Origin: Paragordius varius
Taxonomy: Eukaryota > Animalia > Nematomorpha
DNA: 64,000 nt
NCBI GenBank assembly: GCA_964247055.1
Contig: OZ176052.1
Coordinates: 11,904,001-11,968,000, forward strand
Direction: 5' to 3'
A model generated the notes under the pieces. It was given only the letters and a program-made list of their open reading frames with translations. It ran no database searches and had not been told where the DNA came from. The position numbers and the translations under genes are program-made. Below, piece by piece: positions 20,201 to 64,000 of this stretch (its first letter is position 1; each line of letters opens with the position of its first letter).

Positions 20201-20278
20201 CAAGAAATTGGTTGGCTGAAAATTGGACGATGACTTGTTGGAGTTAAATGAGATAGTAGCTTCCCCACCAACCGACAT
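17249..20278 (-). CDS. E78: Nuclear receptor E78 (ecdysone-induced protein 78C-like, NR1 subfamily), 1009 aa, single coding exon
   Basis: The [82 protein letters not shown] carries the E78-type [12 protein letters not shown] segment (about 18560-18754). The LBD has [20 protein letters not shown] and a C-terminal [11 protein letters not shown]. Long Asn/Ser-rich N-terminus. Confidence 0.92.
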
Positions 20279-33530: not shown

Positions 33531-34360
33531 ATGCTAGTTAATTTTTTTGATCCGCTTTTCATTAAGTCCGTTATATTCATAATATTATCTCCTTTGTATT
33601 GGAATATAGTAAATTTTTAATTTCTAATGTTTAGATTGGACGTGTTGAATACAACACTAAATTTTTATCAAAATTTATTGGAAATTCATTAAATGCCGTT
33701 TATTTATTTGGTATATCCATTTTTATTTTGTCTGGATACAGAAATTACATGTATATTCGTATATATTTTTTAGATTTAAATTAGCCATTAAAGCTCAACG
33801 ACAATCTCATTTACTTGATAATCAAATTATTCATGCTATTGGATGGATATTTATTTTGGCTGGATTAATTTTGGTCTTAGGAAGTTTTTATCATTTAGGG
33901 TTCGTTAATACTTTTTTAGGTATACATATAAATATTAATTACAGGTGATTATTTTGGTTTTTTATTGGATCACAAAATCGTTTCTTTTCCATTTTCTTTT
34001 GTGGATAATCCCATGTATTGGGGTTCCTTTTTAAATTTTTTGGGAACAGCTCTTATTCATAATAGCGTTGCTGGTATTATTTTATCCTTATGGGTGTGGA
34101 TTGTATATAGGATAGCGATTATATACGAAGAGTAATTACTATTATTCTTATTTTAACATTGACCTAATTTTAATAACTATAATAACATGGAAAATATACT
34201 ATACCTATTTATATTTGATAGGCCTTTTACGGAATACATCTATAATCAAAGAAATAAATTAGGAAATGGTAAGAATGGTAAAAAATATAAAAATCTTCAA
34301 AACGGTTTTAGTACCCACTCTAGTCGTCCCAAATCTACCATGCAGTCAAAAAATGAATAA
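33531..34360 (+). CDS. PEMT: Phosphatidylethanolamine N-methyltransferase, 221 aa, 5 exons
   Basis: Exons 33531-33608, 33635-33750, 33774-33919, 33945-34131, 34222-34360 (666 nt). Motifs SPLYWNI-IGRVEY, LGSFYHLGFVNTFLGDYFG, FPFSFVDNPMYWGS and IYEEPFTEYIY. Introns of 26, 23, 25 and 90 nt. Confidence 0.93.
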
Positions 34361-41300: not shown

Positions 41301-44300
41301 TTTATAAAAATATTGTCTTTCGGCTTCTACACATTTCGCCCATGTCTAAGGTAATTTATCAACCATGTCAAAAGGCCCTCTTTTGCGGCAAATCATTAGT
41401 TAAGCCTTTTTTAACGTCTCCGAATTTATTTAAGAGCTATAGTAAGTAATAGTCTATGGCGGATGCGAAAAAATTTCCCATCGAAACTAGGGTGCTTTTC
41501 CTTGGTTTGTGTGAGACGGAACATTGTCATGTAGCAAAATTGCATTGCCATATAATCTGACTCATTCAGGTCGTTTTTAGAACAATGCTTGGTTTAAATT
41601 TATTTAATGTCGATTGTGTGATAAAGATTTCGGTCATTCGTTTATAATATAGAATACGGCTGCAATACCAGACATCTTCTTTTTATGTAAATAAATTGGC
41701 TTTGCTCCGTATACTGATTGTTTTTTGTGATACAGTAATGTTTTTGTAGATTGTCTTTGAGTTTGAGTTAAGTCATCATCCAATAATTCTTCTACTTTAT
41801 CGTCTTTACAGTGTGTGATCAACCAGAGCGCCCATTCTTTTTCACAGTCACAACTTTTAAATTTTTTCCAGGTTTCACATGTTTTAAGTGATAGAGCATG
41901 TTCACCATTTTCTACTATTAATGACAAAAGTCCTTTTCATTTTATGGCAAGGCTGCCGTTAATGTTCTTTTCAGATACAAATCATGATGACTGCATGATA
42001 AAAATTAGACGCTAGTTTTTGAAGAACTCAACTTATGTGTGTTTGTTGATTAACACTTCGATTCAAATTGGGGTATCTAAATACCCCAGACTAAATTAAA
42101 ATTAAAATTTAAAAACTACTGAAGGAAACGGTCCCAATTTAAATTTATGCTTCTATCCTGATAAATATTATATAAATATGCCAAAATATCTTAATAAAAT
42201 TTTGTTTTGAAAAAATAGTTCCATCTCAAACTACTTGGACGCCATTTTTATTTTACAAAAATTTTGCAAAATATCGTCTTCATTTAATTTTAAGGGTAAA
42301 ACTAAAGCTTATTTTTTATATAAATTACATCTAACATTGATAGAAATAGAAAAAGCGGTTTATTTTGTATTATTTTTTAGTTTTACAATTTGACACATGT
42401 CATGGTGACTAAATTTTTACCTTTCAGTTTTAGCTCAAAATAAGTAATATCAAGTATTTGTGAATAAATTTTTTTATATATTTAGGTTTATTAATGTTAT
42501 GTATGTGCAAAATTTTGCCATGGTTTCGATTGTTTCCATACTTTTTAAAGTATTTGATTTTAAACAGCCTGGGGTATCCAATACCCCAATTTGAATCAAC
42601 GAACTAAAATGAGTGTGTTGTATCCAAGTGTTAATGACAGAAAACAAAATGGCGCCTGTGTCGAATCAATCGGCTGCGTACATTTTTTAAAATCTTCTTG
42701 TAGTTTCAACCCTAAGATTAATTAATACAGCTGGTATATCAGGGGTAAAGAATTTAACTGTTATAGTTCAGATTTTAAGTTAATTTTGGCTCCTATTCCA
42801 AAGCTTTTTAAAGGCGATTCCTATTCAAAAAGGGGTTTCAAATTTTAAATACGCATTTCCTAATTACTGAATTATAAATGATAATGAACACACACACACA
42901 TTATTATATACCCCACAAAATTTTTTGTATGCTACATTTATCCAAATAATTTAAAGAAATATATTTATTAAAAAATAGAAAACAATATTGATATAGGGAT
43001 AACATTGTGTTAAAAATAAAAAAGGGCAAAAATTTTAAAAATATTAATTTGGAACCGCTAGAAGCTGCGGCTTACTAAACGGTTTAAATGATTTTAAGAA
43101 CATATATTCCCAATCTCACAAAAATGGCTCGGATCTAATTCATTTAAGAAATAAGTAAACCGATTTGCCACTTTCTCCTATCTATCTCATAATACTTAAT
43201 ATTGGCAAAATAACTTTTGTGAAAGAAATCTAATAATAATGTTTTTGCATACAAAAATAATTATTTATGGGAAAAAAAGGCTCTCATACATATATGTTGG
43301 GACAATTTTATATTCGATTCTTAAATAATTACATTAAAACTACTAAAAAAGATAAAATATGACCATTCCATCTATTCCCCAAAGACCAAAAATCGCATTA
43401 ATATTTTATTTTTTGCCACAAAGTTAGTTATGAATTGCTTCCATGATTTTAGACTATTTAAAAGATGCATCGTAAATGAGCTTATCGTTTTTCTGTTAAA
43501 AAGGAAAACTGAGGACAAATTATATATAAAATTATTATTGGTATACATTTGTATTCTTATTTTTGAAAAAAAGTAGAGAAAATCACAATAGAAATTTTTT
43601 TATTATTTACCTAAAATGGGGAAATAAATAATTTGACATATTAAACCAATTTTCATGAAATATAAACCTTGATACCTATTATAACAATAAGATAAATCAA
43701 AATCAGAATAACAAAGCACCATAGAATTTATTAAATATATTTGAATGTATTTCCTCAATATACATTTTATAAAATAAATGCTTTATTTAATTTTAATAAA
43801 TTAGGGTGTTTTTGCATTGTCGTGGCAACATATTGATGTGAAATATTAATGGAAGGTAATTAACAAAAGTCGTAAAGATTTTTCATTTAAACAAGGGGTA
43901 ACATTAGAACAAATATTGAAAATTCTTTTAAGGAATAAAAATCCATAGAGAGCAAGCCAAAAAATTAAAATGCGTATGAGCCCAACATTAGCGGTGGTTA
44001 AGCATCTTCCTCCATCGACATTAATTAATGCAAAAGCACCCCAATAAGAATCGATATGGTTAAATGGTATAATAATAAGTAAAGTCTCATACATGGTAGC
44101 CGTTGGGTGGTCAGCAAAGAAGGCCATGCTAATGGATGACTAGCGGTTGATGTTACTTGGATAGCGGTAGATTTCTGTTGATTTGCTTGTCGCATAATAT
44201 CTTCAATTTTAGCTCTTTCCCTAACAACTTCCGAATCATAATCCATGTCTTCGACATTAAAATCGTTTGGAGCACTTTGGCTATCGTCTGATCTGGCTGG

Positions 44301-45125
44301 TATAAAAACAGATGGTATCACAGGTTGTTTCCTTCTTGTGGTTATTTCATAAATTTGATTTTTTTGTTTGGGGGCTGGAGTTGCTCCACCGTAGTAGTAT
44401 TTAGTTTTAGTAACCGGTTGTTCTTGTTGTAATAGTAATTGATCCCTATATCTTTGATCAGCGTAGGGAGGCATAATATTAGACCCTTTAGTGGTGATAA
44501 CTGTAATTTGAGGCGGAGGAGGAAGGAGAGGGAATACGCTATCGGGTCCACAACTTGAATCAAAATCTGGACAACAGTCATTAGCTTGGGCACAAAAAGT
44601 GTCACAATAGCATAACGTTCCCAATATCGGTCTATTGCAGGAATCATTACGACGTGTGCAACATAAGTTCCGGTGTGACTGATGAAATGGATGATTTACT
44701 CTTTTACGACGAAAAGATGTTTTCCTGTAACGGTGATGTACATTTTTGTTCTGCTGTCTCGAATCAACTCTACAATAATCTCCGCGGAGATCCCAATCGA
44801 CTTCAGCGTGACCCGTTCCGGTTTTAAGGATTGAATTTCCTTGATAAAATATAGGTTGTCCATATGAATTAACATGTTTTTGATGAACAGTGGCCTTTTT
44901 AAACAATCTATTGGTGTTCTCAGAGTCCCGACCATGGTTAAAACTTAGTTTATCATGATCACTATATTTGCTAAGCAAGTTTTTGTTTATTTTGCGAGCC
45001 AATTCTGGATAAGTGTCTTTGTAGGAGGGACGGCTGTATTCCTGCCCAGCCGAAAAATGGGGTGAGTGCAGCAAAATATATAAACCAAAACTATGGATTA
45101 AGCTGTAAATACAAAACTTTTCCAT
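35370..45125 (-). CDS. TINAGL1: Tubulointerstitial nephritis antigen-like (TINAG/TINAGL1/Swim family) secreted cathepsin-B-fold pseudoprotease, about 710 aa, 9 exons
   Basis: Exons 45125-44093, 41111-40982, 40196-40101, 39984-39752, 39370-39223, 38431-38259, 37672-37549, 37474-37444, 35534-35370 (2133 nt, phase consistent). Domain order: signal peptide; SMB ([17 protein letters not shown]...DCCPDF); [15 protein letters not shown]; [11 protein letters not shown]; NQKLCASSW (catalytic Cys replaced by Ser); [14 protein letters not shown]; [13 protein letters not shown]; HAVRIIGWG; [16 protein letters not shown]. The first donor (44092) is the least certain junction. The symbol denotes the family, not proven one-to-one orthology. 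Confidence 0.88.
35725..35973. mobile_element. hAT MITE with a perfect 8-bp TSD
   Basis: TIR TAGGGTTGTGC / GCACAACCCTA, flanked on both sides by GCCGTAAC (35717-35724 and 35974-35981). Confidence 0.92.
36330..36780. repeat. Probable MITE with inverted 21-bp subterminal repeats (ACACTTCAAGTTGGTCCTTGA-like)
   Basis: Repeated units at 36335-36430, a reverse-complement unit at about 36745-36760, and related units at 49285-49330. Termini not resolved. Confidence 0.45.
37057..37352. mobile_element. MITE with TACCATTTAC termini and 21-bp subterminal tandem repeats
   Basis: TACCATTTAC...GTAAATGGTA. The unit TCAAGGGTGAATTTGAATTGT is repeated in inverted orientation at both ends. Confidence 0.8.
38782..39089. 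mobile_element. MITE of the TACCATTTAC family, reverse orientation
   Basis: TATCATTTACAACTCAAATTCACCC ... CAAATGGTA, with the interior inverted relative to 37057-37352. Confidence 0.7.
41220..42736 (-). pseudogene. Decayed mariner (Mos1-like) element with an internal deletion, interrupted by a piggyBac-like MITE
   Basis: ORF 41634-41927 ([20 protein letters not shown]...[18 protein letters not shown]) resembles the mariner HTH region. [10 protein letters not shown] and [14 protein letters not shown] remnants lie downstream. The 5' end reads TACCAGCTGTA at 42736. Left boundary approximate. Confidence 0.75.
42054..42630 (+). mobile_element. piggyBac-like MITE with TTAA TSD
   Basis: TTAA|CACTTCGATTCAAATTGGGGTATCTAAATACCCC ... 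TATCCAAGTG|TTAA. Confidence 0.9.
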
Positions 45126-46514: not shown

Positions 46515-49500
46515 TTAATTTCTTTCTGCAAAAATATAAGTAGCATATGGGAGCGTTTTAAAAGAAAATGGTTCAAAGTCATGTCCCGTCCCTTGATAAA
46601 ATTTTCTTTGAAACTCAACCCAATGTAATCGTAGGGCATGTAAGAAGGCTGATAATCCCTCCATCAAAACTAAGATAGCTATTGTTAATATGGCCCAAAA
46701 CGCGAAAGCTAAATATAATTTAATTGGGCACAAGTATTTTTCTTCTCTGCAATTGAACCCATAAGCCAATACCATGCGCCACAAAACCTAGAAGATTATG
46801 CGTTATATATGAATAATTTGCTTTTAATCAAGTAAATATTTTATATAGATATACTCCAGATAATTCAGAATGAGCAAGGCTCAATGCCCACAACCTAAGG
46901 TACGATGCTGTGTGGGAAAGAGATTCCAAACAGAATTCCACGGCGCCCATTGCTTGTTTGGTCAACATTTTCCCAAAAAATGAGTGAACTTTTTCCTCTA
47001 TTTGATTGTTAGTTTGATTATGTTGTTTAACTCGTATAAGGTGTAACTTTATCAATGGTTTGGCCAATAACATAAGAGGTATGCATAGTAACGCTATAAT
47101 GACTAGTGCAATCTGTAAAATCTTTTGTCCTTTGTACAAATACACGCCACAAGTCTTGTCATCGGAATAGGAAATGAGGAACATACGTATTAAGTTTTGA
47201 AGCAGACTTGGGGCACATGCTGATTGTGTTGGATCGATTGCAATCCATTTTGCAATAATTAGGATTACCAGGTAGCCAAAGGTTGCCCCAAGGAATATCA
47301 TTCTGGGAACAAAAACACACCACAAATCTAACCATTCACCCTTATCGATATCATTGTAGGCCCCAATAGCCAACCCCATATACATATGGGCTATCCCAAA
47401 TACTATGGACAATTTCATTTTGTAGGAGTTACTAAATGATATTTCGTTCTTTGAAAGATGCCAAATTGGATCCATGCCATATGGGTAAGGACTGGCTTGA
47501 AAGAGAGTTTTTTTACTAAAATTGTTACTAAAATCAGGATCTGCAAAATTAAAAGCATCTATCGGATCTAAAGTGACATAGCTATAATCAAATGGATGCA
47601 TACTGTGAGTGTGCGGTTCTTTAAATAAGGCAAAAACTTTTGTAGAATTAGTTTTGTAGTTTAATGGATATTGTCGGGGTCCCATTATCTCTTGACTCTG
47701 ATTACTCAAATATTCATCATAGTCGGGATAATACATTCTCCACCGTGATCCGTAGAAAGCAATAGATTTTGAAAAGAAGTCGTTGTAAATGACTCCTGTG
47801 TATATGGAGAATATGCCCATAGCCAAAATTAAATATCTCCCATCATAAAACATCTTTGTAGTTTCTTCCGATTTTAGGCTTCGGCTCAAATAAGATTTGT
47901 CAAACCAAATGATATATGCCATTATGCATGTGACCAAGAGTCCGTGACCAGCATCGCCAAACATTACAGCAAACAGAAATGGAAATGTTACCATAAGAAA
48001 AGGGGCCGGATTCATCTCCTTGTATTTGGGTGTACCATACGCATTGACTATGGCTTGGAAAGCATGAGTATACTTGTTGGTTTCAATGTATGTTGGTGGT
48101 CTATATTTGGGTTTGTGATGAAGGCTTTCATCAATAATCAGGTGATGGATAACGTTGCAATTTTGAAATTCTTGATTGTTTAGCTGACATATGGTACTTG
48201 TGATTTTATCAATCTTTGAAACTGGGCACCAACCCTCTCCAATCATATATGAACCATGTTGTCCCTTACCCGACTTAAAATAGTTCATTATGGTGTAAAC
48301 GGATTTCGTTTTAAGCAGCCTTACCATATTTGCCCGAAGATCCGGCGCAAATGATTTTAGCAACTCCATTTTGTGCTCTTTCCCTCGATTAATTATCTAA
48401 AATATGTTAATAAATAAGTTGAAATTAAAAACGCGACCGTTTAAGATTTCACTTCCGGCCCCATATCATTTATTTTTGGTTTCGATTTCATCAATACAAT
48501 GTTTTTTGCGAAAAAAGTGTTTTGTTTCCATTAATGATTCTGATTCCGGTTTTATATATAACCAGAAAAATTATTGATTGTAAAGATAAAGTATGCAGGC
48601 GTAAAAAATAGTCATATATAAAAGCCAAAAATTAATTGTATGCTATTTTTCTCTGAAAATTCAAAATATAAGCTTTTATAATTTTGAATAAGATAACGTG
48701 GTATTATTCATTAATATAAAAATTAAAATTTTTAAGCCGTTTTTAACCGGGTTTAGATCAAATGTGGATTATGTTCCGGTTTAACAAAAAAATATTAAAT
48801 TGATTGTTTTTAAATTTATTTACCTCACTTAATTCGTATATCTGGGTCGTCAAATTTTCATACACCACACCCAATTCAGAAGATAGCAAAGGAAATGGAT
48901 ATATGGAAGCTTTAAAACTTTCACACAGTTTAAGCAATCGACTTTTAAATTCTTTACCTTGGAAAAAGATGACAAATACGGTTTTGAAAAGTGTCTCCAT
49001 GGACGTCGGATCTACGATTGCATTTGGATAATTGTAACGTTTAACTAATACATTTCCACGGCACAATCTCCAAACTATCGTTTCAAAAGCATTAAATTTC
49101 GACGTCAAAATGATCCCTGAACAATCATAAATAACAAAAAATTAACTTATTACTTATATGTACCGAATTCTATGTTATTTGCATGCAGTAACGAAAGCTA
49201 TTATAGGCTATTTCGGTATGGTAAATGGCTAAAAGAGGATTTTATACAGGTCTGTTATACCATTTACATTTCAAGAGAGTCCTTAAACACTTAAAGTTGG
49301 TCCTTGAATACTTCAAGTTGGTCCCTAAACTTTTTAAGCATGGTATGATTCATTTTATTAGTTGCATGTTTAATTAAACACTGTATTAATATTTTCAAAT
49401 ATGTTTCAAATAAAAATGATAAATCTCATATATGGCAACAGTGTAATTAAATACCATTTTAGCCATTTAAAAAATGGTATATAATAGCTCTCGCTAAGCA

Positions 49501-50687
49501 AAATCAAAAAATATTTATCCACTAATATGTTCAATAATTTGCTATAGATAAATTAAATATTTATTAAAAATTTTGTAAAAATTATCTCAATTACTAGCAA
49601 ACTATTAAAAGCGATTCATTTTCTAACTAATAAAAATAATTTGTATGTACAATTATAAGAATATTTGAAAATACTGTTAAAAATGCCTAGAGCATATATT
49701 GGTTTGCTAGGACTTAATTTTAATCAATAGTTTTTGTTCTTTACATCAATTTGCCAAAGTGAATATTATAAAAAATTTTTTATTGTCAACACTTCACCAT
49801 ACTCTTATTATTGTATCTTACTGCGTTTTCCAAAAAACACTCTATTTTCAATACATTTATTATATTAATATTAAGGGAATTTTAATTATGACCTTATAAG
49901 AGTGTATCTGTGCTTGAAAGTTTTTTCGCTCATAAATAAATATTTATAGTGATATATCTTAGATTATTTAAATGTACTAATAGAACGAACCTGCCATACA
50001 TTCTATCTTAAGAATGTTCTTAATCTGTCGTTTACCCACGGCACTTATGGTTTTATCCAATTCTTCAACCTGTTCATTGGGTTCAATAAATAAATTAGCC
50101 ATTAAGGGGATATTAGATTTGACTTCTGGACTCTGATAGCCCTGGCGTGATGAGGGACTACTTGAGGATTGACTTTTATTACGGGTCATGGATTCATTAT
50201 CAGCTTTTGGGCTAGTTAAAAAAGTTTCCTTCATCATGTTAGTGTCCCAAATATTTTCATTGATGGTCGTTCGTACAATATCGAGTTCTGTGAGGTACAA
50301 CAAATTCTTTTGCATTGATACTTCTTGTTCATGTATAATTTTGAATTCGGAATGTAGGGCCTCAAATTCTTGTAATTTGGTCCGAAATTCTTTTTCCGTC
50401 AGTGCCGGTAATAAAGCTACCAAATCCTCCAATGTGTGGATATCGGCCTCCCGAAATTGTATCACGTTTTCGTTTTCACAATGCTTGTAGAAATCTTTTA
50501 AGATAGTCTCTAATCGTTGACACATTTTAATGTTTTCCACGTATTTACGTTGAAAATAATTGCAACCGACATTTAGGTCAAGGAATTGCACTAAACCCAA
50601 ATCACCCAACAAGGCTAAAGTAGTATAAATAGATTCTGTTTGAAAGAAAAATTGGTATAGGCCCATATCCTCGCTATAAAAATCCAT
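46515..50687 (-). CDS. ATP6V0A: V-type proton ATPase V0 subunit a (116 kDa family), about 934 aa, 4 exons, divergent
   Basis: Exons 50687-49991, 49116-48824, 48396-46855, 46787-46515 (2805 nt). Motifs [70 protein letters not shown] (essential Arg) and [18 protein letters not shown]. Paralog identity not assignable. Confidence 0.93.
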
Positions 50688-53949: not shown

Positions 53950-54510
53950 GTATCAACATTTTTAAAAACGACAAAGAAATGGGATCAAGATTATTTTTTA
54001 AATAAGTAATGATAAATATACTTGTTGATATGCAACTCCACCGTGGCTTTGCAAAAAAACAAATCCAAAGACATTACCCTTCACATGAATTATCAGACAT
54101 ACAATTCTGATATTCGCAAATCAAAAATATCAGAAATAATAACAACAACAAATCTTTACAGGACGGCAAGAAGCTTCCATAAAAGCTGAAGCTCTGTTTG
54201 TAAATTATCAAAATATAAGAAATATTATGTAACCAATAAAAAGCTTATATCAATCTAGTAACAGAATTATGCTGAGAGGTCAGGATCTTAAACAGAATCT
54301 TACCAAAGTTTTAATAAAAATTTTAAATCTTAAACGTTTTTTTCGCTTAAAATTAATGAGTTTACCGATTACATAGGAATTTGCGCAATTATGCCTTTTT
54401 ATTCGCATAATCTTCCATGACATGTCAGCTACAGAACAGTTATTGACTGTCATCAGTTTGCAGGAACCCACCTGAGGTCAAAATGTATTCAATTCTTTTA
54501 ACAAATATAG
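53950..54510 (+). pseudogene. Second hAT transposase remnant (N-terminal part), opposite strand
   Basis: KWDQDYF...LICNSTVAL (BED-finger-like) and AQLCLFIRIIFHDMSATEQLLTVISLQEPT*GQNVF, matching the post-DESTD region of this family. Confidence 0.65.
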
Positions 54511-54785
54511 TGAAGTTTCAAAATTACTGATTAATTTTATCTATAAAACTAACTACTCAATAATAATTATTTTTCGTATTATTATTTGACATGTCACCCC
54601 CCGTAAACATTCGCATCATTTATATTGATGTAATAAATAAATCTTTTTATACCTAATATTCATACTTGCTTACACAATATATTTTCCCAAAAAGTAGATC
54701 GCGGGAAAATAAGGTTGGTCACCCCTCTCTTATAAGCAGATACTCTCATCTGATTAACTAATTTAGTGTAAGTAACATCTGTCAA

Positions 54786-57700
54786 ATGGATCAACCCACT
54801 GGTATTCTTTTTCAATTTATGCTAGATCTTGAACTTAAAAATATAATTGATAAATTGGCAAATTTTGTTGCAAGAAACGGACCACAATTTGAAGAAATGA
54901 CCAAATCTAAACAGTTACATAATCCAAAGTTCAGTTTTCTATACGGTGGTCCTTACAATTCATATTATCGGTATAAAGTTCACGAGGAGATACAAAGTTA
55001 TTTTAATTTTTAATGTTAGATATGTCAAAAATGAATACCAACCAATATCAGTTTTCTAATACACAAAATTTACCGATACCATCAAATACTTATGATGGTA
55101 ATCGTGATTATTTAAATGATCAACTTGAAAAACTTAATGCAGAACAACAAGTATTTAAATTTGTAATTTACAGAATCGTATAATGGAAGGGATTCTTAAA
55201 GAATATGATAGGGAAATAATTAATTTACTTCAAGTCTGTCAACTGGATTCCGTTGAAATAGATAAGATTATCCAACCTATAATTGAAACTTGTACCAAAG
55301 ATTCCATATTAGTTAATCAAAGTTATATAATATAGAATGGAAAAACATGGGTTTTACAGCACTTATCTCCCCCATTTTCTAAACTATTTTCAGTGTATTT
55401 ACTGAAAAAGTGAGCAAATTTAAAAAATATATATTTGTTTTAATAAAAAATAGTTTAATTACTATAATAATTAATAAATATTTATTTTATATTGTAGGGT
55501 ACTGTCTGAATCCTTATTTGATTCTCGCCTTCACATTATTTATCTGATAAATGATCTGATGCACCATTGGTATGATATATTTTATATAACATATTTATAC
55601 AAAATATATATAAGCCTTTTGGTTTTTACCATATTGTGATTTAACACTTGGATGCAACACATTGATTTTAGTCCTTCGATTTAAATTGGGGTAGTTAAAT
55701 ACCCCAGGCCTCTTTAAAATCAAATACTTTAAAAAATATGGAAGGAATCGAAACCACGGCAAAATTTTGCACTTATATAACATTAATAAACCTAAATATA
55801 CTAAAAACTTATTCAAAAATATTTGATTTTACATATTTAAAGCTAAAACCGAAAGGTAAAATTTCGTCAACGTGACATGTGTCAAATAGTAAAATTAGAA
55901 AATAATACAAAATAAACCGCTTTTTCCATTTCTATCAATGTTAGATGTAATTTATATTAAAAATTAGCTTTAGTTTTACCCTTAAAATTAAATAAAGACG
56001 ATATTTTGCAAAAATTTTGCAAAATAAAAATGGCGTCGAAGTAGTTTGAGATGGAACTTTTTTTTCAAAACAAAATTTTATCAAGATATTTTGGCATATT
56101 TATATAATTTTTATCAGGATAGAAGCATAAATTTAAATCGGGACCGTTTCCTTCAGTAGTTTTTTAAAAATCCTAACTTAAATTTAGTCTGGGGTATTTA
56201 GATACCCCAATTTGAATCGAAGTGTTAAAGCGTTTGTAAATTGTATTTTGTTTTTCCAAAAATGAACACTTTAGTAAATTTCAAAAATTTATTTGATTAC
56301 GGCTCTTTTTTACTGTTCAGCGGTGTACCTATATAAATTATTAAAAACGGTTTTAAAATGGTTACAACTATCTGTTTTTCAAATTCTCAATTTCCCAATG
56401 CAAATCGCCTTTTAAATAATAATTAAAATAAACCAATTATTTATTGTTGTGATGAAACTAAAAATAATATTTATAATATAGCTGAAATCAATTCGAATAA
56501 AATATTTGTGAGTATTTATATATTGTAATTTTGATGGAGGTACCAAAATATGTATAAGGATGATATGCAACGTAAATATATAAATTTCAATTACACATTT
56601 TTATTAATTCATTGCTTTTTCAGTTTTGTCTGTTAACAATGATATCTCAAAAATGAACTTAAATATAAAAAATTGTTTTGGGATTCAACATTTACAACGG
56701 GCATACATTAATGAGTTTGACTTTCTTATGCAAAAAGATTTACCTAATTTTATTACACAAATTAAATTATTCCTTTTTGATATGAGTAAACATAAAAATT
56801 TACATTTTATGTTTACATTTGCAATAGTTTTAAAATTCTAAACTAAATATAATTATTTTTCTGTTAATTTAGCTCTCGACGAAACGTTCAAGAATTAAAG
56901 GGTGCTCTGACAAACGTTATTAAACCAATTTATTCGCACACTTTTGTTAATGCTCAAAATCAAGAACAAAAAGACAAATTAGAAAAACTGTTAAATTTAT
57001 GGGAAAACAACAATTATTTTGATTCTACAACCATTGCAGTAAATTTATTATTTTTTACTTTATATTTTTTTAAAAAAAGGTGGTAAGTTCGCTATTTTAC
57101 ACAATATCTTTGTAAAGAGTTAAGTTATTTTACTCATACAAGCTTATATTCCGCCATATTAATAAAATTTGATATGATATTCATCTAAGTAATTAATATT
57201 CAAAAACTAGCAAATTATGTTAAATGTCATATGATTAAAATTTATATGCGGAAAACAGTGTTACTTAATTTTCTATGAAATTTCCATAATTACTTTCATT
57301 ATTAGCAATTAAGAGACCCCTATCAAGTCCTCAATAATTATCAGAATGATTTAAAGTACCAATATGAGAACATTGTAAATCCCATCATATCTGAGTTTGA
57401 TGAACGCTACAATACCCTTAAACGTGAATACGATTACAATGAATCGACAAAAACGCCTTACCATAACAGCACTGTTAATGCTATGAATAAAGTTTATCCT
57501 TCGGCACAACCCCCACTTTTGCCCGGTAAGTTAGAAACAAACTTTTTATCTTTTCCCTAATAATTTTTATTTTTGGGCAAGGGATTCTTAAAACTTAGAT
57601 TTAAAAGTTTAGCTATCTTTTCAAGTTGGTTTAAGGTTTGAGGTTTGATATTTATGTTATAAAACCAGACTTTTACGCATAAAGTTTAAGCCAATTTTGT

Positions 57701-60023
57701 GCTAAGAATAAACTTAATATGGAATAAGCCGCTTTAAATGTTAAAGTTTGGTAATATACGGTGGTCCAGTGATTATATTATTATTATTATTTAAATACAA
57801 ATATGCACAAATAAAGTAATTTGCTTGATAATAATTGTTTTTATACATTAAATATAAATTTAATGATGTATATATAGATCCATCATTATCCATAAATAAT
57901 ACGCGTACACCATTAATGGGCGTAGGTCCGATCGGGTCTCAGGCCCAATCTCTCAATGCTAGTAATACTCAAATTCAACAAAATGGTCAGATGGGCCCAG
58001 ACTCAAACAATTTAGCTACCATGTTTGCCAATTTCATGACGGCAAACGCCTCAAATAATATGAATGCTGCTCCACCTTTCCCCCCTCCTTTTATGTCCCA
58101 ATCTACTGGTAACGTATTGATTGCACTTAAATATAACATATATGTATATATGTTCAAAATATTTTTGGTATCCGAAAAAAAAATCTTAACATACGAGAAC
58201 AAATTTATTTATTTCTATATATTTTTTTCATTTGTTTTATAGATAATATCACAGTAAAATTAAAATTTAAGACATACTTAAAACACAATATTTGTTATAA
58301 ATAGATAATTATATTTACAGCTTTCATTTTTCAACGCAAAACGATGATATATATTTAAAATATAGGTTTAATATACATGATTGTCTTTTCGAAATAATAT
58401 ATGTCTCTTAGTTTTTACATTATTTTGTCTATATATGGTAAAGATTTATTTTTAATAACCTTTATATCTTAACCTGCCCCCAAAAAAAGTTGAATAAAAT
58501 TTTATTTCAATATAGATGATCGATTAAAAAACCCAAATATGATGGGTAACCGAGACGCCAACAATAATGAAATGTTCAATTCATTTTTGCAAGCCTTCAA
58601 ACAAAACGAACAGAATAATCAACAACCATTGGGGGCTGGTTTTCGATTACCAGGAGCTTTACCTCCTAATTTTGCAGCTATTTTTAATGCTTTTATGTCA
58701 GCAACACCTGCCGCAAACAATAGTAATCTTAAAAATATATTTTTAATTAATTACAATAATTTTAATTTAAAATAGCAGCATCGAAAGCTAATATTTTTAT
58801 TTGTGCTTATAGAAAAATGCTTAATTTTATCTATCGAAACATGCAATAGTAACATTATTTTTTTTCTTTCTAATGTAAGATTCAGTAGTTCCTCTAAGTA
58901 TGACCAATTTTTTTAGATCAAGAGCGCTTAGATACTAATTATCTTACGACTTTTTAGATTTATTTTAAAATTATATAAGTAACCGCATATTATTAGTTTA
59001 TGTATAAGTTTGAGCGGTTGTATCTTAATCATAGTTTTATCTATATATTATCTCATGCTGAGTATCATGTTTTTTTAATTTAATGATAAGTTCCTAGTTA
59101 AAATATATAGATTATTTAAAAACGTGTCTTCTAAAATTACTATTCGTCGTTCCTCATATACAATTTTTTTGAAAATTTTTATTGTTGTTAACCAATTCCA
59201 GCAAACAATTCAAATTTACAACATAAACATAAGTTGCTAATATTTATGTAAAAAAATATAAAAAAAAATCGAGAGAACTATAACTTTGAGTAAATAAAAG
59301 AGTTTACATGGGATCAATCATCAAGAATGACATTCCATATATCACTCATCTTTTGTCCTTCTTCTCGGTTATAGTTGTTTCTATTGAAAATCTATAATGA
59401 TTCTCGTGTAAGTCTTTGATTATTATCGCAAATCGAATAATGCAACTAACATTGTCAAAAGAAATGTTACTGTTTTTATTCCAAAAAAGTTATTTTTTAT
59501 ATTATACCGCTTAGTATATAATTGCACACTTATTAATAATTTGTAAGAAATTATAACGGTTAATACAAAACCAATCATTTTAATATCCTAAAAGTATATG
59601 ACAATCTGATTTAGCTCCTCTTAGTCTCCAGGTATCTCAAAACGCTTAAATTATGACTACTTGACAATGCTGCTCATTTTTTTAATAAGAGTTCGAATGC
59701 ATTTTCTTTTAATACGTTGCTCCTTAAATATATTATTTTTTATAAATTTTTTAAACTCGGATATATTAGTGATGAAACCAGCACTAATGAATATGTTTGC
59801 TTCCCTTATGGGATCTATGCCTTTCCTACCACCCAATTTGAATGGTGGAGCAGGAGGAGGGGGTCCTCTATTATCTGCCATGAATGACCCACACAATTCT
59901 GAAATGCCAATAAACACATTTAATCCCAATTCGGATGATGGAAATACTGATTCTGCCAAATCTATCGTACCAGTTTTACCCTATTTCGATCTACCTGCCG
60001 GATTAATTGTCGATTTAGTCAAA
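54786..60023 (+). CDS. CHERP: Calcium homeostasis endoplasmic reticulum protein (SURP + CID splicing factor), 5' part; gene continues beyond the window
   Basis: Exons 54786-54801, 54826-54996, 55020-55150, 55174-55311, 55336-55409, 55498-55569, 56873-57038, 57306-57525, 57878-58108, 58516-58722, 59770-60023. SURP (IIDKLANFVARNGPQFE), CID (IIETCTKDSI-NGKTW...RLHIIYLINDLMHHC...LLNLWENNNYF) and LPYFDLPAGL. All phases are consistent. Confidence 0.92.
55645..56224 (-). mobile_element. piggyBac-like MITE with TTAA TSD inside CHERP intron 6
   Basis: TTAA|CACTTGGATGCAAC ... GAATCGAAGTG|TTAA. Reverse complement of 42054-42630. Confidence 0.9.
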
Positions 60024-60221
60024 GTATACAACAACTTAAAAACACATATTGTGCAATTTTTTTAAAGGAAAGTTTAATAAGTGTAGTCCGGTTCAGGATC
60101 CGCTTGATCGTTAAAATTAAATTAAGTTTTAAATTAATTTCAATTAATATACAGTTATATTTATTGTTGCTCCACATGATTAAATAAGCAATGAAATTTT
60201 TATATTTTTATTTTCTCATTA

Positions 60222-60958
60222 CACTGGACAACAAATTTTTCTGCCACTCGAGTTTTTAGTATTTTCTGATATTTAGTATCATTTTAGCAGTAAATCTGAA
60301 ATAAAAATTATAACTCGTTGGAAGAATTTTGTATAATTTGATTTTTTTGATTATGCCCCCTCTTTATCAAAATTTTACTAAAAAATATTTTTCTTTGAAA
60401 ATATACAAGTAATGCCCATTTGTAATATATCATTCGAAAGAGTAATAAAAACTCTATAAAATGCATACTAATATGTATTACATTGACAGTTAATATTGGA
60501 CACAAAGAGCGACAAACGGGCGAAGCGAGAGCATTTTTTTTAATTAATATATTTTTAAAACTAATGGATGAAAATAGCTCAAACTTTGTTTAGATGGTGA
60601 TGAATGTCCAAAAAAGATAACACAAGAAAGTTTTTTTGATTAAAACATTTTATTATTGCTTTTATGTCACTCAAAACAGCCATTTTTAGGTTTTTTGTTT
60701 TATTAAAATTACCATCTCATCAATATTAATTTATTTTCTTTACAGGGCTGATAATTTCGAAATTTTAAAGATAAAAACAAAGTTTAAGGTATTTTTGATC
60801 TTTTATAGCCATTATGTAATAAATTTACAGTTATAACTATGCATTTTAGTATCCACTAGGTAAAATATTTATGATAATAATAATTTTTATTAAAAAAGCA
60901 AACCAAAAGCTTTTTCAAACATTTTTTTTAAATTAAATACTAATATAACCCTAATAAT
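60222..60958 (+). mobile_element. CAC..GTG/TWA MITE, copy 3, cut by the LINE insertion
   Basis: TTA|CACTGGACAACAAATTTT. Colinear with 282-1017 up to CCCTAATAAT, where the LINE tail begins. Confidence 0.9.
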
Positions 60959-63900
60959 CCATCCATCCATTCATTTTAGGTCCCAGGGTATCTGGGGTTT
61001 CCATGCACCAACTTCCTGAACAATGTCCTATCAAAGACTTGTTCGTGTTCAATATTGAAGTGTGATAGATCTTGGGTCAGCTGTTTGGACCATGTGAGCT
61101 TAGGGCGGCCTTTTCTGTTTGGGCCGGGTATATTTAAATGTTGTATTTTTTGGACCCAGTTATCGGAATTCATACGTTGAATATGTCCGTAATATCGCAA
61201 TCGATTGCGCTGGATGAATAGAGCTATGGGTTCATCTTCTTCTATGGTATTATCAAAATTATTGTTGCAGATTTTGAGCATGTGATTTTCAGCTCTAGTA
61301 AGTCTATTTAGGTCTGTTGCTGTAAGGGCCCAGGTTTCTGTAGCGTATGTCATAGCTGGTCTTATTCCCATTTTGTAAATCTTTATCTTGTGATTCGATT
61401 TGATATTTTTATGAGTTAAAATATATTTTAATTGATTGAATTTGGCCCATCCTTGTCTGATTCTATGAGAAATGGCATCCCTCAAAGAACCATCAGATGC
61501 TATATAATCGCCCAGATATGGAAAAGATGTTACAACTTCTAGTTTATCTCCATTAAAGTTTAAAGTACGTGGATTCGATATTGGCAGTGGTATTGATGAA
61601 GCACATGGTGTGCAGATGAAATTATTATTATTAATTAACTTTCCTTTTATGTTGGAACATTTTTTATGGACCCAATTTCTGCATTTTGTACAACAAAGTG
61701 AGTTTAGTTTTACCTCAGTGGTGCACTCTGGGCATGGGAACTTTATAGTTTTATGTTCATCTCCTGTGATTAGAATTTTAGTTTTGGTTGTATTGATTTT
61801 AAGACCGTATTTATGTAATTGTTTTGACCATATAAGATATTTATTTTCGAGTATTGAAATATCTTCTGCAGTGATTATGAGGTCGTCTGCATAAAGAATT
61901 TCATAAGGCAGACCTTCTCTCATATCTTTTGTTATGTAATCAATTATAGCTATAAAAAGAAGTGGGCTAAGGACAGATCCCTGATGCAGCCCAGTATTTA
62001 TACTAAAATACTCTGAATTCCCAACAGGAGTAAGAACACAACTGATTGAGTTAGTGTAGATTAACATAATTAACTTAATGGTATATTCATCTACGTTGTT
62101 GTAGCGCAGTGATTCTATTATTAGTGCTCTAGGTACTGAGTCGTAAGCCTTTTCTAAATCGACAAAAAGGTGGAATAGTTTACGACCTTTTGCTCGGTAT
62201 TTATCTTGTAATTGTCTGAGTAGGAAAATTGGATCGATTGTGCTTTTGCCCGCTGAAAAGGCGAATTGCATTGGATTAATTGATATGAGCTGGACGATAC
62301 GATTTTTGAGGCACATTTCAAAAATTTTTAACCCATGTTCAAGAAGTTTTAAGGGCCTGTATGAGGAACAGGTTAGGATATCTCCTTTATTTTTGAAAAT
62401 GGGAAATATAATGCTTTTTTCCCAGTCTTTGGGTATTTTCATTTCAACTATTATTTTGTTAAATAAATTTGTTAGAAGCATGGTTATATTGGGTATTAAT
62501 TTAATGATATCAAAACATAGTTCACTAGGGCCCGAAGCCTTGTTTGATTTCATTTGGTCTAAAGCAATCTCAATTTCTTGTATTGTGAATGTATTTAATG
62601 GGCCACAACAGGGATCTCGGTCAGAATTTATTATGGGTGTTAAAGGGTTGTTTAGATTTTGCTCCATATATTTTTGCCATATGGATTTAATTAATTCTGG
62701 TTGTATTTGTAAATTATTATTATTATCTTTTATACATTTAATCGTTGGTATATCTTTTTTGTTATTATTGTAAAGTTTCATATGTTTAAAAATTTTATTA
62801 TTTTGGATTTCCTTTTCCAATTTATCGGCAGTATCTTTAGCCTTTTCATTCATTAATTTATTTATTTCCTTTTGAACCTTTTTGTTGTATTTATAATACT
62901 CAGTTTTGTCGTTTTCTGTTTTCGATTTCTTCCATTTTTTATACAAACGCGCCTTTTCTTTAAGTAATGGCTTAATTGCATCGTCCCACCACCATTTCTT
63001 TTGGGCTTTGCTCTTTCTTCTACCACACCATTTTTCTACATTTTCAATCGTATTGCTTCTTAGACTTTGCCAGGAGTCTTCAACGTCAAGATTATCAATA
63101 TTTAAGTTAAGCGACTTTTTGAAATTATTCATTATATCAGGTTTTTTAAACTTGTGTATATTAAGTTTAGGTTTGGTTCTATGATTGAAAGGCCTTGAGT
63201 TAAATTTGAAAATTGATGTTAAAACTTTATGCTGTGTTTCAGAGTTATAAGTGGTTGTATTTACCAGATATTTTCGAATGTGTTGGCTAGTTAGGATGTA
63301 GTCTATTGTTGTATTATTATTGCCAGAAGTGTATGTAATCAGTTTATTTTTGCTTGTGGTGAATAAAGTGTTTGCTAACTGTAGTCGCTGAGCTGCACAG
63401 AATTCTAAGACATTTTCTCCTTCTTTGTCCCGATTATCAAAGTTGTATCCTCCATGTATACCAGAAAAACCTTCGCTGCTTCCAACATGTGCATTTAAAT
63501 CTCCTCCAATCATTATACAGTCTGTTTCGGGTATATTGGAACATATTTGATAGAGCTGATCCCAAAAATCCAGCTTGCATTTATCGGGCAAGCCTTTTTG
63601 GGGTGCATATACGGAAATAACATTGAGGATCAATTTGTTGTATATCATTCTAGCTTGAATAATTCTATCACTGTGCCGGGTCACGGTAATTAGGTTTTGT
63701 CGGTGTGTTTCTTTCATCATTATAGCGACGCCAGATTGTCCTTTGTTCCCACCTTGGTATAGTAATGAATAACCATCAAAGTGTTTTATACCTGCATTTT
63801 TATATCGAGTTTCTTGTAAACAGCATATGTTTAAATCTAAGTTTCGCACCGTATCTATTACCAGCCATTGCTTATTAACCATTGTTCCAACATTCCAAGA

Positions 63901-64000
63901 GCCAATTTTAAATGGTTCCGATATAGATTTGAAGTTTTTATTTAGATTATTGTATCTTATTTTTATTTTTGGTTGTTCATTTGTACCTGGTTTATTTATT
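60959..64000 (-). mobile_element. RTE-clade LINE with an uninterrupted APE + RT ORF (over 1000 aa), PHD-like insertion and (GGAT)n tail; 5' end beyond the window
   Basis: The frame stays open upstream of the annotated Met to the window edge (…FKIGSWNVGTM). APE motifs LQETR, GGDLNAH, IDYIL. RT motifs FVDLEKAYD, GLHQGSVLSPLLF, YADD. Stop at 60976 is followed by AATGAATGGATGGATGG. Confidence 0.93.

What the first reader, a model, noticed from the sequence alone, without database searches (positions are those of the whole stretch)
54802..55335. Four consecutive 23-24 nt introns in CHERP confirm the tiny-intron class in an independent gene
The introns are 54802-54825 (24 nt), 54997-55019 (23), 55151-55173 (23) and 55312-55335 (24). 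All are GT-AG and extremely AT-rich, and three have a TAAT motif a few bases before the AG as a candidate branch point with no room for a polypyrimidine tract. The last three give stops if retained, and splicing restores contiguous SURP and CID motifs (CTKDSIL|NGKTW). With PEMT this makes seven tiny introns in a 4-nt size range, so it looks like a genome-wide system rather than a local oddity.
Basis: partly seen in the sequence, partly recalled or inferred. Interest (0 to 1): 0.85.

Follow-up and report, generated by a model that had tools for sequence, protein, structure and literature searches.

The report
Four tiny introns in hairworm CHERP
The first four introns of the CHERP gene of this AT-rich animal genome (a horsehair-worm relative) are only 23-24 bases long and sit where other animals have introns of 75 to 24,602 bases, so they look like real ancient introns shrunk to near the lower limit; no RNA data could be found to show them being spliced out.

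Summary
Four GT-AG intervals lie at 54802-54825 (24 nt), 54997-55019 (23), 55151-55173 (23) and 55312-55335 (24), with 13-25% GC. Removing them, plus six longer GT-AG introns (88-1303 nt), gives one open 560-residue reading frame. That frame aligns along its length with CHERP/SCAF6 proteins.

The strongest new evidence is position. All four tiny introns fall in the same alignment column and codon phase as introns of 75-24,602 nt in a sea star, a crinoid and a spider. Three of the four also match Trichinella. This supports intron 1 as well, which is in frame and has no stop.

Nine of the eleven exonic differences shown between haplotypes are synonymous in the spliced frame, so the gene is under selection.

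The organism groups with Gordionus (Nematomorpha) with 100/100 support. It is not a myxozoan or, as far as I can tell, a dicyemid.

No RNA evidence could be obtained: all four runs I laid are DNA, so the splicing itself is inferred.

A September 2026 paper reports animal introns under 30 bp only in myxobolid myxozoans and in Dicyema. Nematomorph papers I could search do not mention introns.

This scan has already reported the same intron class at least ten times on other DNA of this genome, so this is one more well-supported instance.

The parts
54786..54801 (+). CHERP exon 1 (ATG plus 16 nt, encodes MDQPT and the first base of D)
   Evidence: M-D-x-P matches the N-termini of orthologs (MDLP...). 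It ends in phase 1, like exon 1 of four orthologs.
54802..54825 (+). Tiny intron 1: 24 nt, GT-AG, phase 1, GC 0.25. In frame and without a stop, so the reading frame alone does not prove it is an intron.
   Evidence: Same column and phase as introns of 506, 272, 1210 and 24602 nt in Acanthaster, Trichinella, Anneissia and Stegodyphus.
54826..54996 (+). CHERP exon 2: a complete Surp module
   Evidence: Pfam PF01805, E 1e-20. It spans 57 codons between introns 1 and 2, as in all four orthologs. All three haplotype differences shown here are synonymous.
54997..55019 (+). Tiny intron 2: 23 nt, GT-AG, phase 1, GC 0.13. TAAT with its second A 6 nt from the 3' end.
   Evidence: Retention shifts the frame into stops. 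Same column and phase as introns of 337, 255, 831 and 4651 nt.
55020..55150 (+). CHERP exon 3 (variable linker and coiled region)
55151..55173 (+). Tiny intron 3: 23 nt, GT-AG, phase 0, GC 0.17. TAAT with its second A 7 nt from the 3' end. One haplotype differs at intron position +4 (55154 T>A).
   Evidence: Same column and phase as introns of 529, 1246 and 4636 nt in Acanthaster, Anneissia and Stegodyphus. In Trichinella the intron is shifted.
55174..55311 (+). CHERP exon 4 (46 codons; ends with the start of the CID domain, ...IIETCTKDSIL)
   Evidence: It spans 46 codons between introns 3 and 4 in Acanthaster, Anneissia and Stegodyphus; in Trichinella 46 codons separate its nearby phase-0 intron from intron 4.
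55312..55335 (+). Tiny intron 4: 24 nt, GT-AG, phase 0, GC 0.17. Its last codon would read as an in-frame TAG. TAAT with its second A 5 nt from the 3' end.
   Evidence: Same column and phase as introns of 142, 75, 833 and 2982 nt in all four orthologs. It lies inside the CID domain.
55336..55409 (+). CHERP exon 5 (CID, NGKTWVLQHL...)
55410..55497 (+). Intron 5: 88 nt, GT-AG, phase 2
   Evidence: Position shared with Trichinella and Stegodyphus.
55498..55569 (+). CHERP exon 6 (CID profile positions 45-63)
55570..56872 (+). Intron 6: 1303 nt, GT-AG, phase 2. It holds a high-copy MITE-like element at about 55640-56229.
   Evidence: Position shared with all four orthologs.
56873..57038 (+). CHERP exon 7 (CID profile positions 67-117)
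   Evidence: Pfam PF04818, E 1.1e-9.
57039..60023 (+). Rest of CHERP as far as modelled. Exons: 57306-57525, 57878-58108, 58516-58722, 59770-60023. Introns: 267, 352, 407 and 1047 nt. The last exon begins the DUF7819 region (VLPYFDLPAGL).
60024..64000 (+). Next CHERP intron, running off the window. It holds an RTE-like non-LTR retrotransposon ORF on the minus strand (60976-63882). The G-patch end of the gene was not seen in the window.
33609..33944 (+). The three PEMT tiny introns used for comparison: 33609-33634 (26 nt), 33751-33773 (23) and 33920-33944 (25). A fourth intron, 34132-34221, is 90 nt.
   Evidence: The spliced product is an open frame ending in a stop and carries GDYFG and DNPMYWGS (my identification of these as typical PEMT motifs is from my own knowledge, not a Pfam run).

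Best explanation
These are four genuine U2-type GT-AG spliceosomal introns of the CHERP/SCAF6 gene of a nematomorph (horsehair-worm) relative. They are ancient bilaterian introns that in this lineage have shrunk to 23-24 nt, close to the smallest size a spliceosome is known to handle. They belong to a discrete size class (23-26 nt in this window). That class coexists in the same genes with ordinary and transposon-filled introns of 67 nt to more than 4 kb.

Likely mechanism (inferred, not shown): each intron is recognised as a unit across its own length. The 5' signal is reduced to GT[A/T]. A branch adenosine lies only 5-7 nt from the 3' AG, often in TAAT. There is no separate polypyrimidine tract. 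The strong AT-richness of the introns against the exons (13-25% versus 35.5% GC) may help to mark them.

Shown: the sequence anatomy, frame restoration, gap-free homology across the junctions, conserved positions and phases, purifying selection on the spliced frame, and presence of the intervals in DNA of several samples. Inferred: the excision itself, the branch point, and intron-definition recognition.
For: (1) Removing the four intervals and six longer GT-AG introns gives one open 560-aa frame. Reading through introns 2-4 gives stops.
(2) Exon 2 is a full Surp module. Exons 6 and 7 match CID profile positions 45-63 and 67-117. Orthologs are named CHERP or SCAF6 by their sources.
(3) The spliced protein aligns without gaps across junctions 4, 5 and 6 to 21 orthologs.
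(4) Exact protein-to-genome maps of four orthologs, aligned with the model, put all four tiny introns in the same column and phase as introns of 75-24,602 nt. Independently of any alignment, the spacing is 57 codons between introns 1 and 2 in all five species, and 46 codons between introns 3 and 4 in the window, Acanthaster, Anneissia and Stegodyphus.
(5) Nine of the eleven exonic haplotype differences shown are synonymous in the spliced frame.
(6) The intervals are present, with unchanged length, in DNA contigs of several runs, so they are not assembly errors.
(7) TAAT has its second A 5-7 nt from the 3' end in 5 of 7 tiny introns, against 1.6 expected.
(8) Organism: the V-ATPase a exon is 49% identical to Gordionus and at most 40% identical to any other listed hit, and the two group at 100/100 support. 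A nuclear-receptor gene shows it is an animal.
Against: There is no RNA evidence. No RNA run holds the locus and all four runs laid are DNA. No transcript-derived protein of this species was found. Intron 1 could be read through, or bypassed by a start at the ATG inside it (54818). The branch-point motif rests on seven introns and a distance window chosen after seeing the data. The nematomorph placement rests on one protein with long branches, and no nematode was in the tree.
Confidence: 0.85

Rival explanations
1. Only three of the four are introns. The first interval (54802-54825) is coding: it is either read through (adding GILFQFML) or the protein starts at the ATG inside it (54818), giving MLDLELKNIID...
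For: The interval is 24 nt, in frame and has no stop. It contains an ATG in the frame of exon 2.
Against: All four mapped orthologs have an intron at exactly this column and phase, 57 codons before the next intron. Splicing gives M-D-x-P...P-x-D-x-E-L, which matches ortholog N-termini. Retention would put a hydrophobic stretch where orthologs have a proline-rich one.
Confidence: 0.12
2. The locus is a dead or untranscribed gene copy, and the short intervals are simply never removed.
For: No RNA evidence exists for this locus.
Against: Eleven exons join into 560 open codons in DNA that is about 27% GC, where stop codons are frequent. Nine of eleven exonic differences between haplotypes are synonymous, and the one indel shown in an exon is 3 nt long. 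The intervals keep GT-AG ends at conserved intron positions.
Confidence: 0.03
3. The DNA is not from a nematomorph but from a lineage where such introns are already published (myxobolid myxozoan, dicyemid or ciliate), for example a contaminant.
For: GC of about 27% resembles Henneguya at 29% (PMC13644364). Intron sizes match those lineages.
Against: The V-ATPase a exon groups with Gordionus at 100/100, and every other listed hit is at most 40% identical. GC matches Gordionus at 26.9%, and so does the repeat-rich character of the genome. Kilobase introns filled with transposons are unlike the compact myxobolid and Dicyema genomes. TAA and TAG act as stops here, unlike in Paramecium-type ciliates (my own knowledge). 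No dicyemid sequence was compared directly.
Confidence: 0.04
4. The intervals are removed by something other than the ordinary spliceosome, such as DNA elimination (as with ciliate IES) or a non-spliceosomal RNA cut.
For: Their size is below what most animal spliceosomes handle. No RNA data exclude it.
Against: GT-AG ends, no TA-type boundaries, and positions and phases identical to ordinary spliceosomal introns of other animals. The intervals are present in all DNA runs laid. Comparable sizes are spliced conventionally in myxobolids and Dicyema (PMC13644364).
Confidence: 0.02

Closest known systems
Ultra-short introns of myxobolid Myxozoa (Henneguya salminicola, Thelohanellus kitauei, Myxobolus; median 22-27 bp; PMC13644364)
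   Same: Animal GT-AG introns under 30 nt at conserved positions. The 5' signal is reduced (about GTa), a few A residues lie just upstream of the AG, there is no polypyrimidine tract, and short introns cluster next to other short introns.
   Different: Myxobolid genomes are compact (about 75 Mb in Henneguya) and the short size is the median for the whole genome. Here the tiny class sits beside introns of 67 nt to more than 4 kb filled with transposons, with an empty size gap between. The host is a bilaterian (an ecdysozoan), not a cnidarian.
Dicyema japonicum introns (Dicyemida; cited in PMC13644364 as the only other animal case)
   Same: A parasitic animal with spliceosomal introns under 30 nt at conserved positions and with reduced splice-site motifs.
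   Different: It is a different phylum. As described there, short introns dominate the genome, whereas here they form one of two classes. I did not compare Dicyema sequences directly.
Ciliate tiny introns (Paramecium about 25 nt, Stentor 15-16 nt; cited in PMC13644364; the Paramecium details are from my own knowledge)
   Same: A narrow length distribution near a physical minimum, AT-richness, and a branch A a few bases from the 3' end.
   Different: These are unicellular organisms, nearly all of whose introns are tiny, and many use altered genetic codes. Here standard stop codons apply and long introns coexist.
Short introns of nematodes (the C. elegans mode of about 47 nt and its UUUUCAG 3' site are from my own knowledge; Trichinella CHERP introns are 57-439 nt)
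   Same: A lineage generally placed as sister to Nematomorpha (my own knowledge). Some 3' ends here (TTTAG, TTACAG) resemble the nematode site.
   Different: Nematode introns do not go below about 40 nt. Here the class is 23-26 nt.

Membership tests
U2-type GT-AG spliceosomal intron | GT at the 5' end and AG at the 3' end | tested here: met
   All four tiny introns, and all six longer CHERP introns modelled.
U2-type GT-AG spliceosomal intron | Removal is needed for, and restores, the reading frame and homology | tested here: met
   Met for introns 2, 3 and 4. Intron 1 is in frame without a stop, so the frame alone does not decide it.
U2-type GT-AG spliceosomal intron | Position and phase shared with introns of orthologous genes | tested here: met
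   Same column and phase in Acanthaster, Anneissia and Stegodyphus for all four introns, and in Trichinella for three.
U2-type GT-AG spliceosomal intron | Branch-point adenosine upstream of the 3' splice site | tested here: inconclusive
   Candidate TAAT with its second A 5-7 nt from the 3' end in 3 of the 4 CHERP introns and 5 of all 7. Shuffles give P about 0.008, with the distance window chosen afterwards. No lariat data.
U2-type GT-AG spliceosomal intron | Excision seen in RNA | not testable with these tools
   No RNA run holds the locus. The four runs laid are DNA. No transcript-derived protein was found.
Ultra-short (<30 nt) intron class, as in Myxobolidae, Dicyemida and ciliates | Length under 30 nt with a narrow distribution | tested here: met
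   The seven sizes are 24, 23, 23, 24, 26, 23 and 25 nt. The next shortest introns in the window are about 67, 88 and 90 nt.
Ultra-short (<30 nt) intron class, as in Myxobolidae, Dicyemida and ciliates | Reduced splice-site motifs | tested here: inconclusive
   At the 5' end the tiny introns share only GT plus A (5 of 7) or T (2 of 7) at +3, and none has G at +5. The six longer CHERP introns have a purine at +3 in 6 of 6 and G at +5 in 3 of 6. Numbers are small.
Ultra-short (<30 nt) intron class, as in Myxobolidae, Dicyemida and ciliates | Short size typical of the whole, compact genome | tested here: not met
   The same genes carry introns of 88-1303 nt and one of more than 4 kb with transposons. 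I saw no tiny intron in the V-ATPase gene.
CHERP / SCAF6 | N-terminal Surp module | tested here: met
   PF01805, E 1e-20, above the Pfam cut-off.
CHERP / SCAF6 | CID domain after the Surp module | tested here: met
   Exon 7 matches PF04818 at E 1.1e-9, above the cut-off. Exon 6 matches profile positions 45-63. The region aligns to the CID of orthologs.
CHERP / SCAF6 | DUF7819 region and C-terminal G-patch | tested here: inconclusive
   Only the first 22 positions of DUF7819 are seen, at the end of the last modelled exon (E 5e-4, below the cut-off). The rest of the gene lies beyond an intron that runs off the window.
Ciliate-type internal eliminated sequence (removed from DNA) | TA-type boundaries and absence from somatic DNA | tested here: not met
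   The boundaries are GT-AG. The intervals are present in all DNA contigs laid. The tissue the DNA came from is unknown.

The most novel reading that the evidence does not exclude
Horsehair worms, or at least this lineage of them, are a third and so far unpublished animal group with spliceosomal introns under 30 nt. Unlike the two published groups, they have them as a discrete class in a large, transposon-rich genome. The tiny introns are clustered at the 5' ends of genes next to kilobase introns. So extreme intron shortening would not require genome compaction. Part of the reported 'loss of universal genes' and the low BUSCO scores of nematomorph genomes might then come from gene finders that cannot model such introns.
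Probability: 0.55. Interest if true: 0.75.

Novelty: new member of a known kind. Interest (0 to 1): 0.6.

Why it matters
A paper of September 2026 (PMC13644364) states that animal introns under 30 bp occur only in myxobolid myxozoans and Dicyema, both with compact genomes, and predicts that more cases will turn up. A nematomorph with a separate 23-26 nt class beside long, transposon-filled introns would be a third, independent origin.

It would also separate intron miniaturisation from genome shrinkage. That makes it possible to ask what sets the lower size limit and why only some introns of a gene shrink: here the first four of at least eleven in CHERP and the first three of four in PEMT.

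There is a practical side too. From my own knowledge, common pipelines treat gaps this short as deletions or set a minimum intron length well above 26 nt. Genes like this one would then be broken or missed. That bears on the 71.6% BUSCO score of Gordionus and on claims of large-scale gene loss in Nematomorpha (Cunha et al. 2023, cited but not read). This last link is an inference and was not tested.

Tried and rejected
(1) RNA evidence. The single run search found no RNA holder. I guessed that the low-share runs X3-X5 might be RNA, but they are DNA contigs that run straight through the tiny introns.

(2) Transcript-derived proteins of the same species. There was no hit above 76% identity for exon 2 among proteins of 31-98 aa, none above 79% among the 50%-identity representatives, and no same-species hit for the V-ATPase exon.

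(3) The CHERP locus of Gordionus. The Gordionus V-ATPase protein is not in the contig index, so I could not test synteny or intron sizes in a second hairworm. A profile made from one ortholog plus the window's exon pieces was misaligned by MAFFT, so I did not search with it.

(4) A window-wide scan, without homology, for GT-AG intervals joining open frames. It gave as many hits with control dinucleotides as with GT-AG, so it does not discriminate. I dropped it in favour of homology-guided models.

(5) Length conservation of the tiny introns between haplotypes. No indel is seen, but only about 0.2 would be expected in 94 nt, so this says nothing.

(6) Rfam found nothing in the window.

(7) I considered a myxozoan origin because of the matching GC content and rejected it on the protein hits and the tree.

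Full report
**What is in the sequence.** All have GT-AG ends and 13-25% GC. Reading through introns 2, 3 and 4 runs into stop codons or shifts the frame. Intron 1 is 24 nt, in frame and has no stop, so the reading frame alone cannot show that it is an intron.

I extended the gene model downstream. Eleven exons from 54786 to 60023 join into one open frame of 560 codons. All ten introns are GT-AG, with sizes 24, 23, 23, 24, 88, 1303, 267, 352, 407 and 1047 nt. After 60023 a further intron runs off the window. It holds an RTE-like retrotransposon ORF on the minus strand. Exons are 35.5% GC and the introns 10-25%.

**What the gene is.**
- Exon 2 alone is a complete Surp module (Pfam E 1e-20).
- Exon 6 matches CID profile positions 45-63 and exon 7 matches positions 67-117 (E 1.1e-9).
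- The last modelled exon begins DUF7819.
- A search of 1.8 billion representative proteins with exon 2 returned proteins whose sources call them 'calcium homeostasis endoplasmic reticulum protein' or 'SR-related CTD associated factor 6'.
- Their domain order is Surp, CID, DUF7819, G-patch.

The spliced model aligns with 21 such proteins along its length. There is no gap at the junctions CTKDSIL|NGKTW (tiny intron 4), LLKK|VLS (intron 5) and LMHH|CSRRN (intron 6). Tiny intron 4 does lie inside the CID domain.

**Are the tiny intervals real introns?** The strongest test I could run was comparative. I fetched the genomic loci of four annotated orthologs:
- Acanthaster planci (sea star, L001)
- Trichinella patagoniensis (nematode, L002)
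- Anneissia japonica (crinoid, L003)
- Stegodyphus dumicola (spider, L004)

I mapped each annotated protein exactly onto its DNA to get every intron's codon and phase.

In a MAFFT alignment with the window's model, each of the four tiny introns falls in the same column and phase as an intron of the other animals:

| Tiny intron | Phase | Intron sizes at the same position in the other animals (nt) |
|---|---|---|
| 1 | 1 | 506, 272, 1210, 24602 |
| 2 | 1 | 337, 255, 831, 4651 |
| 3 | 0 | 529, 1246, 4636 (Trichinella has a shifted intron nearby) |
| 4 | 0 | 142, 75, 833, 2982 |

The spacing supports this without depending on the alignment. There are 57 codons between introns 1 and 2 in all five species. 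There are 46 codons between introns 3 and 4 in the window, Acanthaster, Anneissia and Stegodyphus. So these are ancient bilaterian intron positions that here hold only 23-24 nt.

This also settles intron 1 in favour of being an intron. Splicing it gives an N-terminus M-D-x-P...P-x-D-x-E-L like that of orthologs. An alternative start at the ATG inside it (54818) cannot be fully excluded.

**Is the gene alive?** The DNA runs I laid hold a second, clearly divergent haplotype. Of the eleven exonic differences listed, nine are synonymous third-position changes in the spliced frame. The one exonic indel listed is 3 nt long. That is the pattern of a gene under purifying selection, and the gene can only be read if the tiny intervals are removed.

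The intervals appear with unchanged length in contigs from several runs. X4 and X5 contigs span 54774-55119 and 55172-55403 without gaps. They are therefore not assembly artefacts.

**What is missing.** There is no RNA evidence. The run search found no RNA holder. The four runs I laid are all DNA, since their contigs run through the introns. Protein searches found no transcript-derived fragment of this species. Another note of this scan (s1-305267) says that RNA of the same species shows tiny introns being cut out at a different locus. I could not check that.

**The class.** In the same window the PEMT gene needs three introns of 26, 23 and 25 nt (33609-33634, 33751-33773, 33920-33944), followed by one of 90 nt. 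Its spliced product is open to a stop codon and carries GDYFG and DNPMYWGS. The window thus has seven introns of 23-26 nt. The next shortest are about 67 nt (V-ATPase), 88 nt (CHERP) and 90 nt (PEMT), then 267-1303 nt and one of more than 4 kb.

In both genes the tiny introns are the first ones and lie next to each other: four of at least eleven in CHERP and three of four in PEMT. I saw none in the V-ATPase a gene.

The tiny introns are 54% T, 35% A, 6% C and 4% G. At the 5' end they share only GT followed by A or T, and none has G at +5. The longer CHERP introns have a purine at +3 in six of six and G at +5 in three of six.

TAAT occurs with its second A 5-7 nt from the 3' end in five of the seven, against 1.6 expected from shuffles (P about 0.008). 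I chose the distance window after seeing the data, so this is only suggestive. Just 2-4 nt lie between TAAT and the AG, so there is no room for a polypyrimidine tract.

**How it most likely works (inference).** This is ordinary U2-type splicing in which each intron is recognised as one unit across its own length. The 5' signal is minimal, the branch A lies very close to the AG, and AT-richness sets the intron apart from its exons. This matches what is described for myxobolids and Dicyema: a reduced GTa 5' site, a few A residues just upstream of the AG, and a canonical U2 snRNA and U2AF (PMC13644364).

**Whose genome.** The window holds a nuclear-receptor gene, so it is animal DNA. A 513-aa exon of V-ATPase subunit a is 49% identical to the protein of Gordionus sp. 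(Nematomorpha), with E 3.5e-137. Every other listed hit is at most 40% identical, with E 5.7e-111 or weaker. In a maximum-likelihood tree the two group at 100/100 support. Both have long branches, and no nematode was in the set.

The window's GC of about 27% matches the 26.9% of the 288-Mb, 64%-repeat Gordionus genome. A myxozoan origin is rejected on the protein hits and the tree. No dicyemid sequence was compared directly, but the grouping with Gordionus and the repeat-rich, long-intron character of the DNA argue against one.

**What is known.** PMC13644364 (Mol Biol Evol, September 2026) compared 51 animal genomes. It reports introns under 30 bp only in myxobolid myxozoans and Dicyema japonicum, and expects more cases. 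It does not mention nematomorphs in its main text, and its supplements are not held. No paper in the library contains both 'Nematomorpha' and 'short introns'. The Gordionus genome preprint and a preprint comparing mermithid and nematomorph genomes never use the word 'intron'.

So this appears to be an unpublished third animal lineage. It differs in one respect: the tiny class coexists with long, transposon-filled introns in a genome that is not compact.

Within this scan the same class has already been reported at least ten times on other DNA of this genome. This finding is an additional, well-supported instance, not a first discovery.

**Verdict.** My confidence that these are real spliceosomal introns is 0.85, somewhat lower for intron 1 taken alone. 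I rate it a new member of a known kind, with an unusual two-class setting, and give it an interest of 0.6. The score is held down mainly by the lack of RNA proof.

Noticed in passing
window 55640-56229 (inside CHERP intron 6): A MITE-like element of about 590 nt with imperfect 70-nt terminal inverted repeats (55667-55736 and 56160-56229, 73% complementary). Summed contig depth in the DNA runs is thousands of times that of the flanks, and many contigs end at its edges, so it is very high-copy.
   Followed up: partly
window 60218-60400 and 59228-59424: Two more repeated stretches in CHERP introns. Summed contig depth jumps about a thousand-fold from 60218 onward and about twenty-fold at 59228-59424.
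   Followed up: no
window 60976-63882 (minus strand): A 968-aa open frame with endonuclease and reverse-transcriptase domains (an RTE-like non-LTR retrotransposon), plus a weak PHD-finger match. It sits inside the next CHERP intron.
   Followed up: no
window 54500-60400: A second haplotype or population differs strongly from the assembly: about 8% in intron 6 (26 differences in 334 nt) and 1.5-4% across the exon-rich contigs. X1 looks heterozygous, while X4 and X5 carry only the other form at many sites. X3, labelled as a different organism, holds stretches identical to the window.
   Followed up: partly
window 17249-20278 (minus strand): A nuclear hormone receptor whose DNA-binding and ligand-binding domains both lie in one uninterrupted 1009-aa exon, with a long N-terminal extension of about 500 aa.
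   Followed up: no
window 46518-50681 (minus strand): A V-ATPase subunit a gene with introns of about 67, 430 and 1100 nt and no tiny intron seen. The only nematomorph homolog in the database (Gordionus) is annotated as a 524-aa partial protein, which may be a broken gene model.
   Followed up: partly
CHERP (54802-55335) and PEMT (33609-33944): In both genes the tiny introns are the first introns and lie next to each other, while the longer ones lie downstream. From my own knowledge this is the reverse of the usual animal pattern of long first introns. Other notes of this scan mention the same 5' bias.
   Followed up: partly
window 44025-45125 (minus strand): A 366-aa open frame with a borderline Somatomedin B match (E 1e-4, 23.0 bits against a cut-off of 23.1). 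The gene is unidentified.
   Followed up: no
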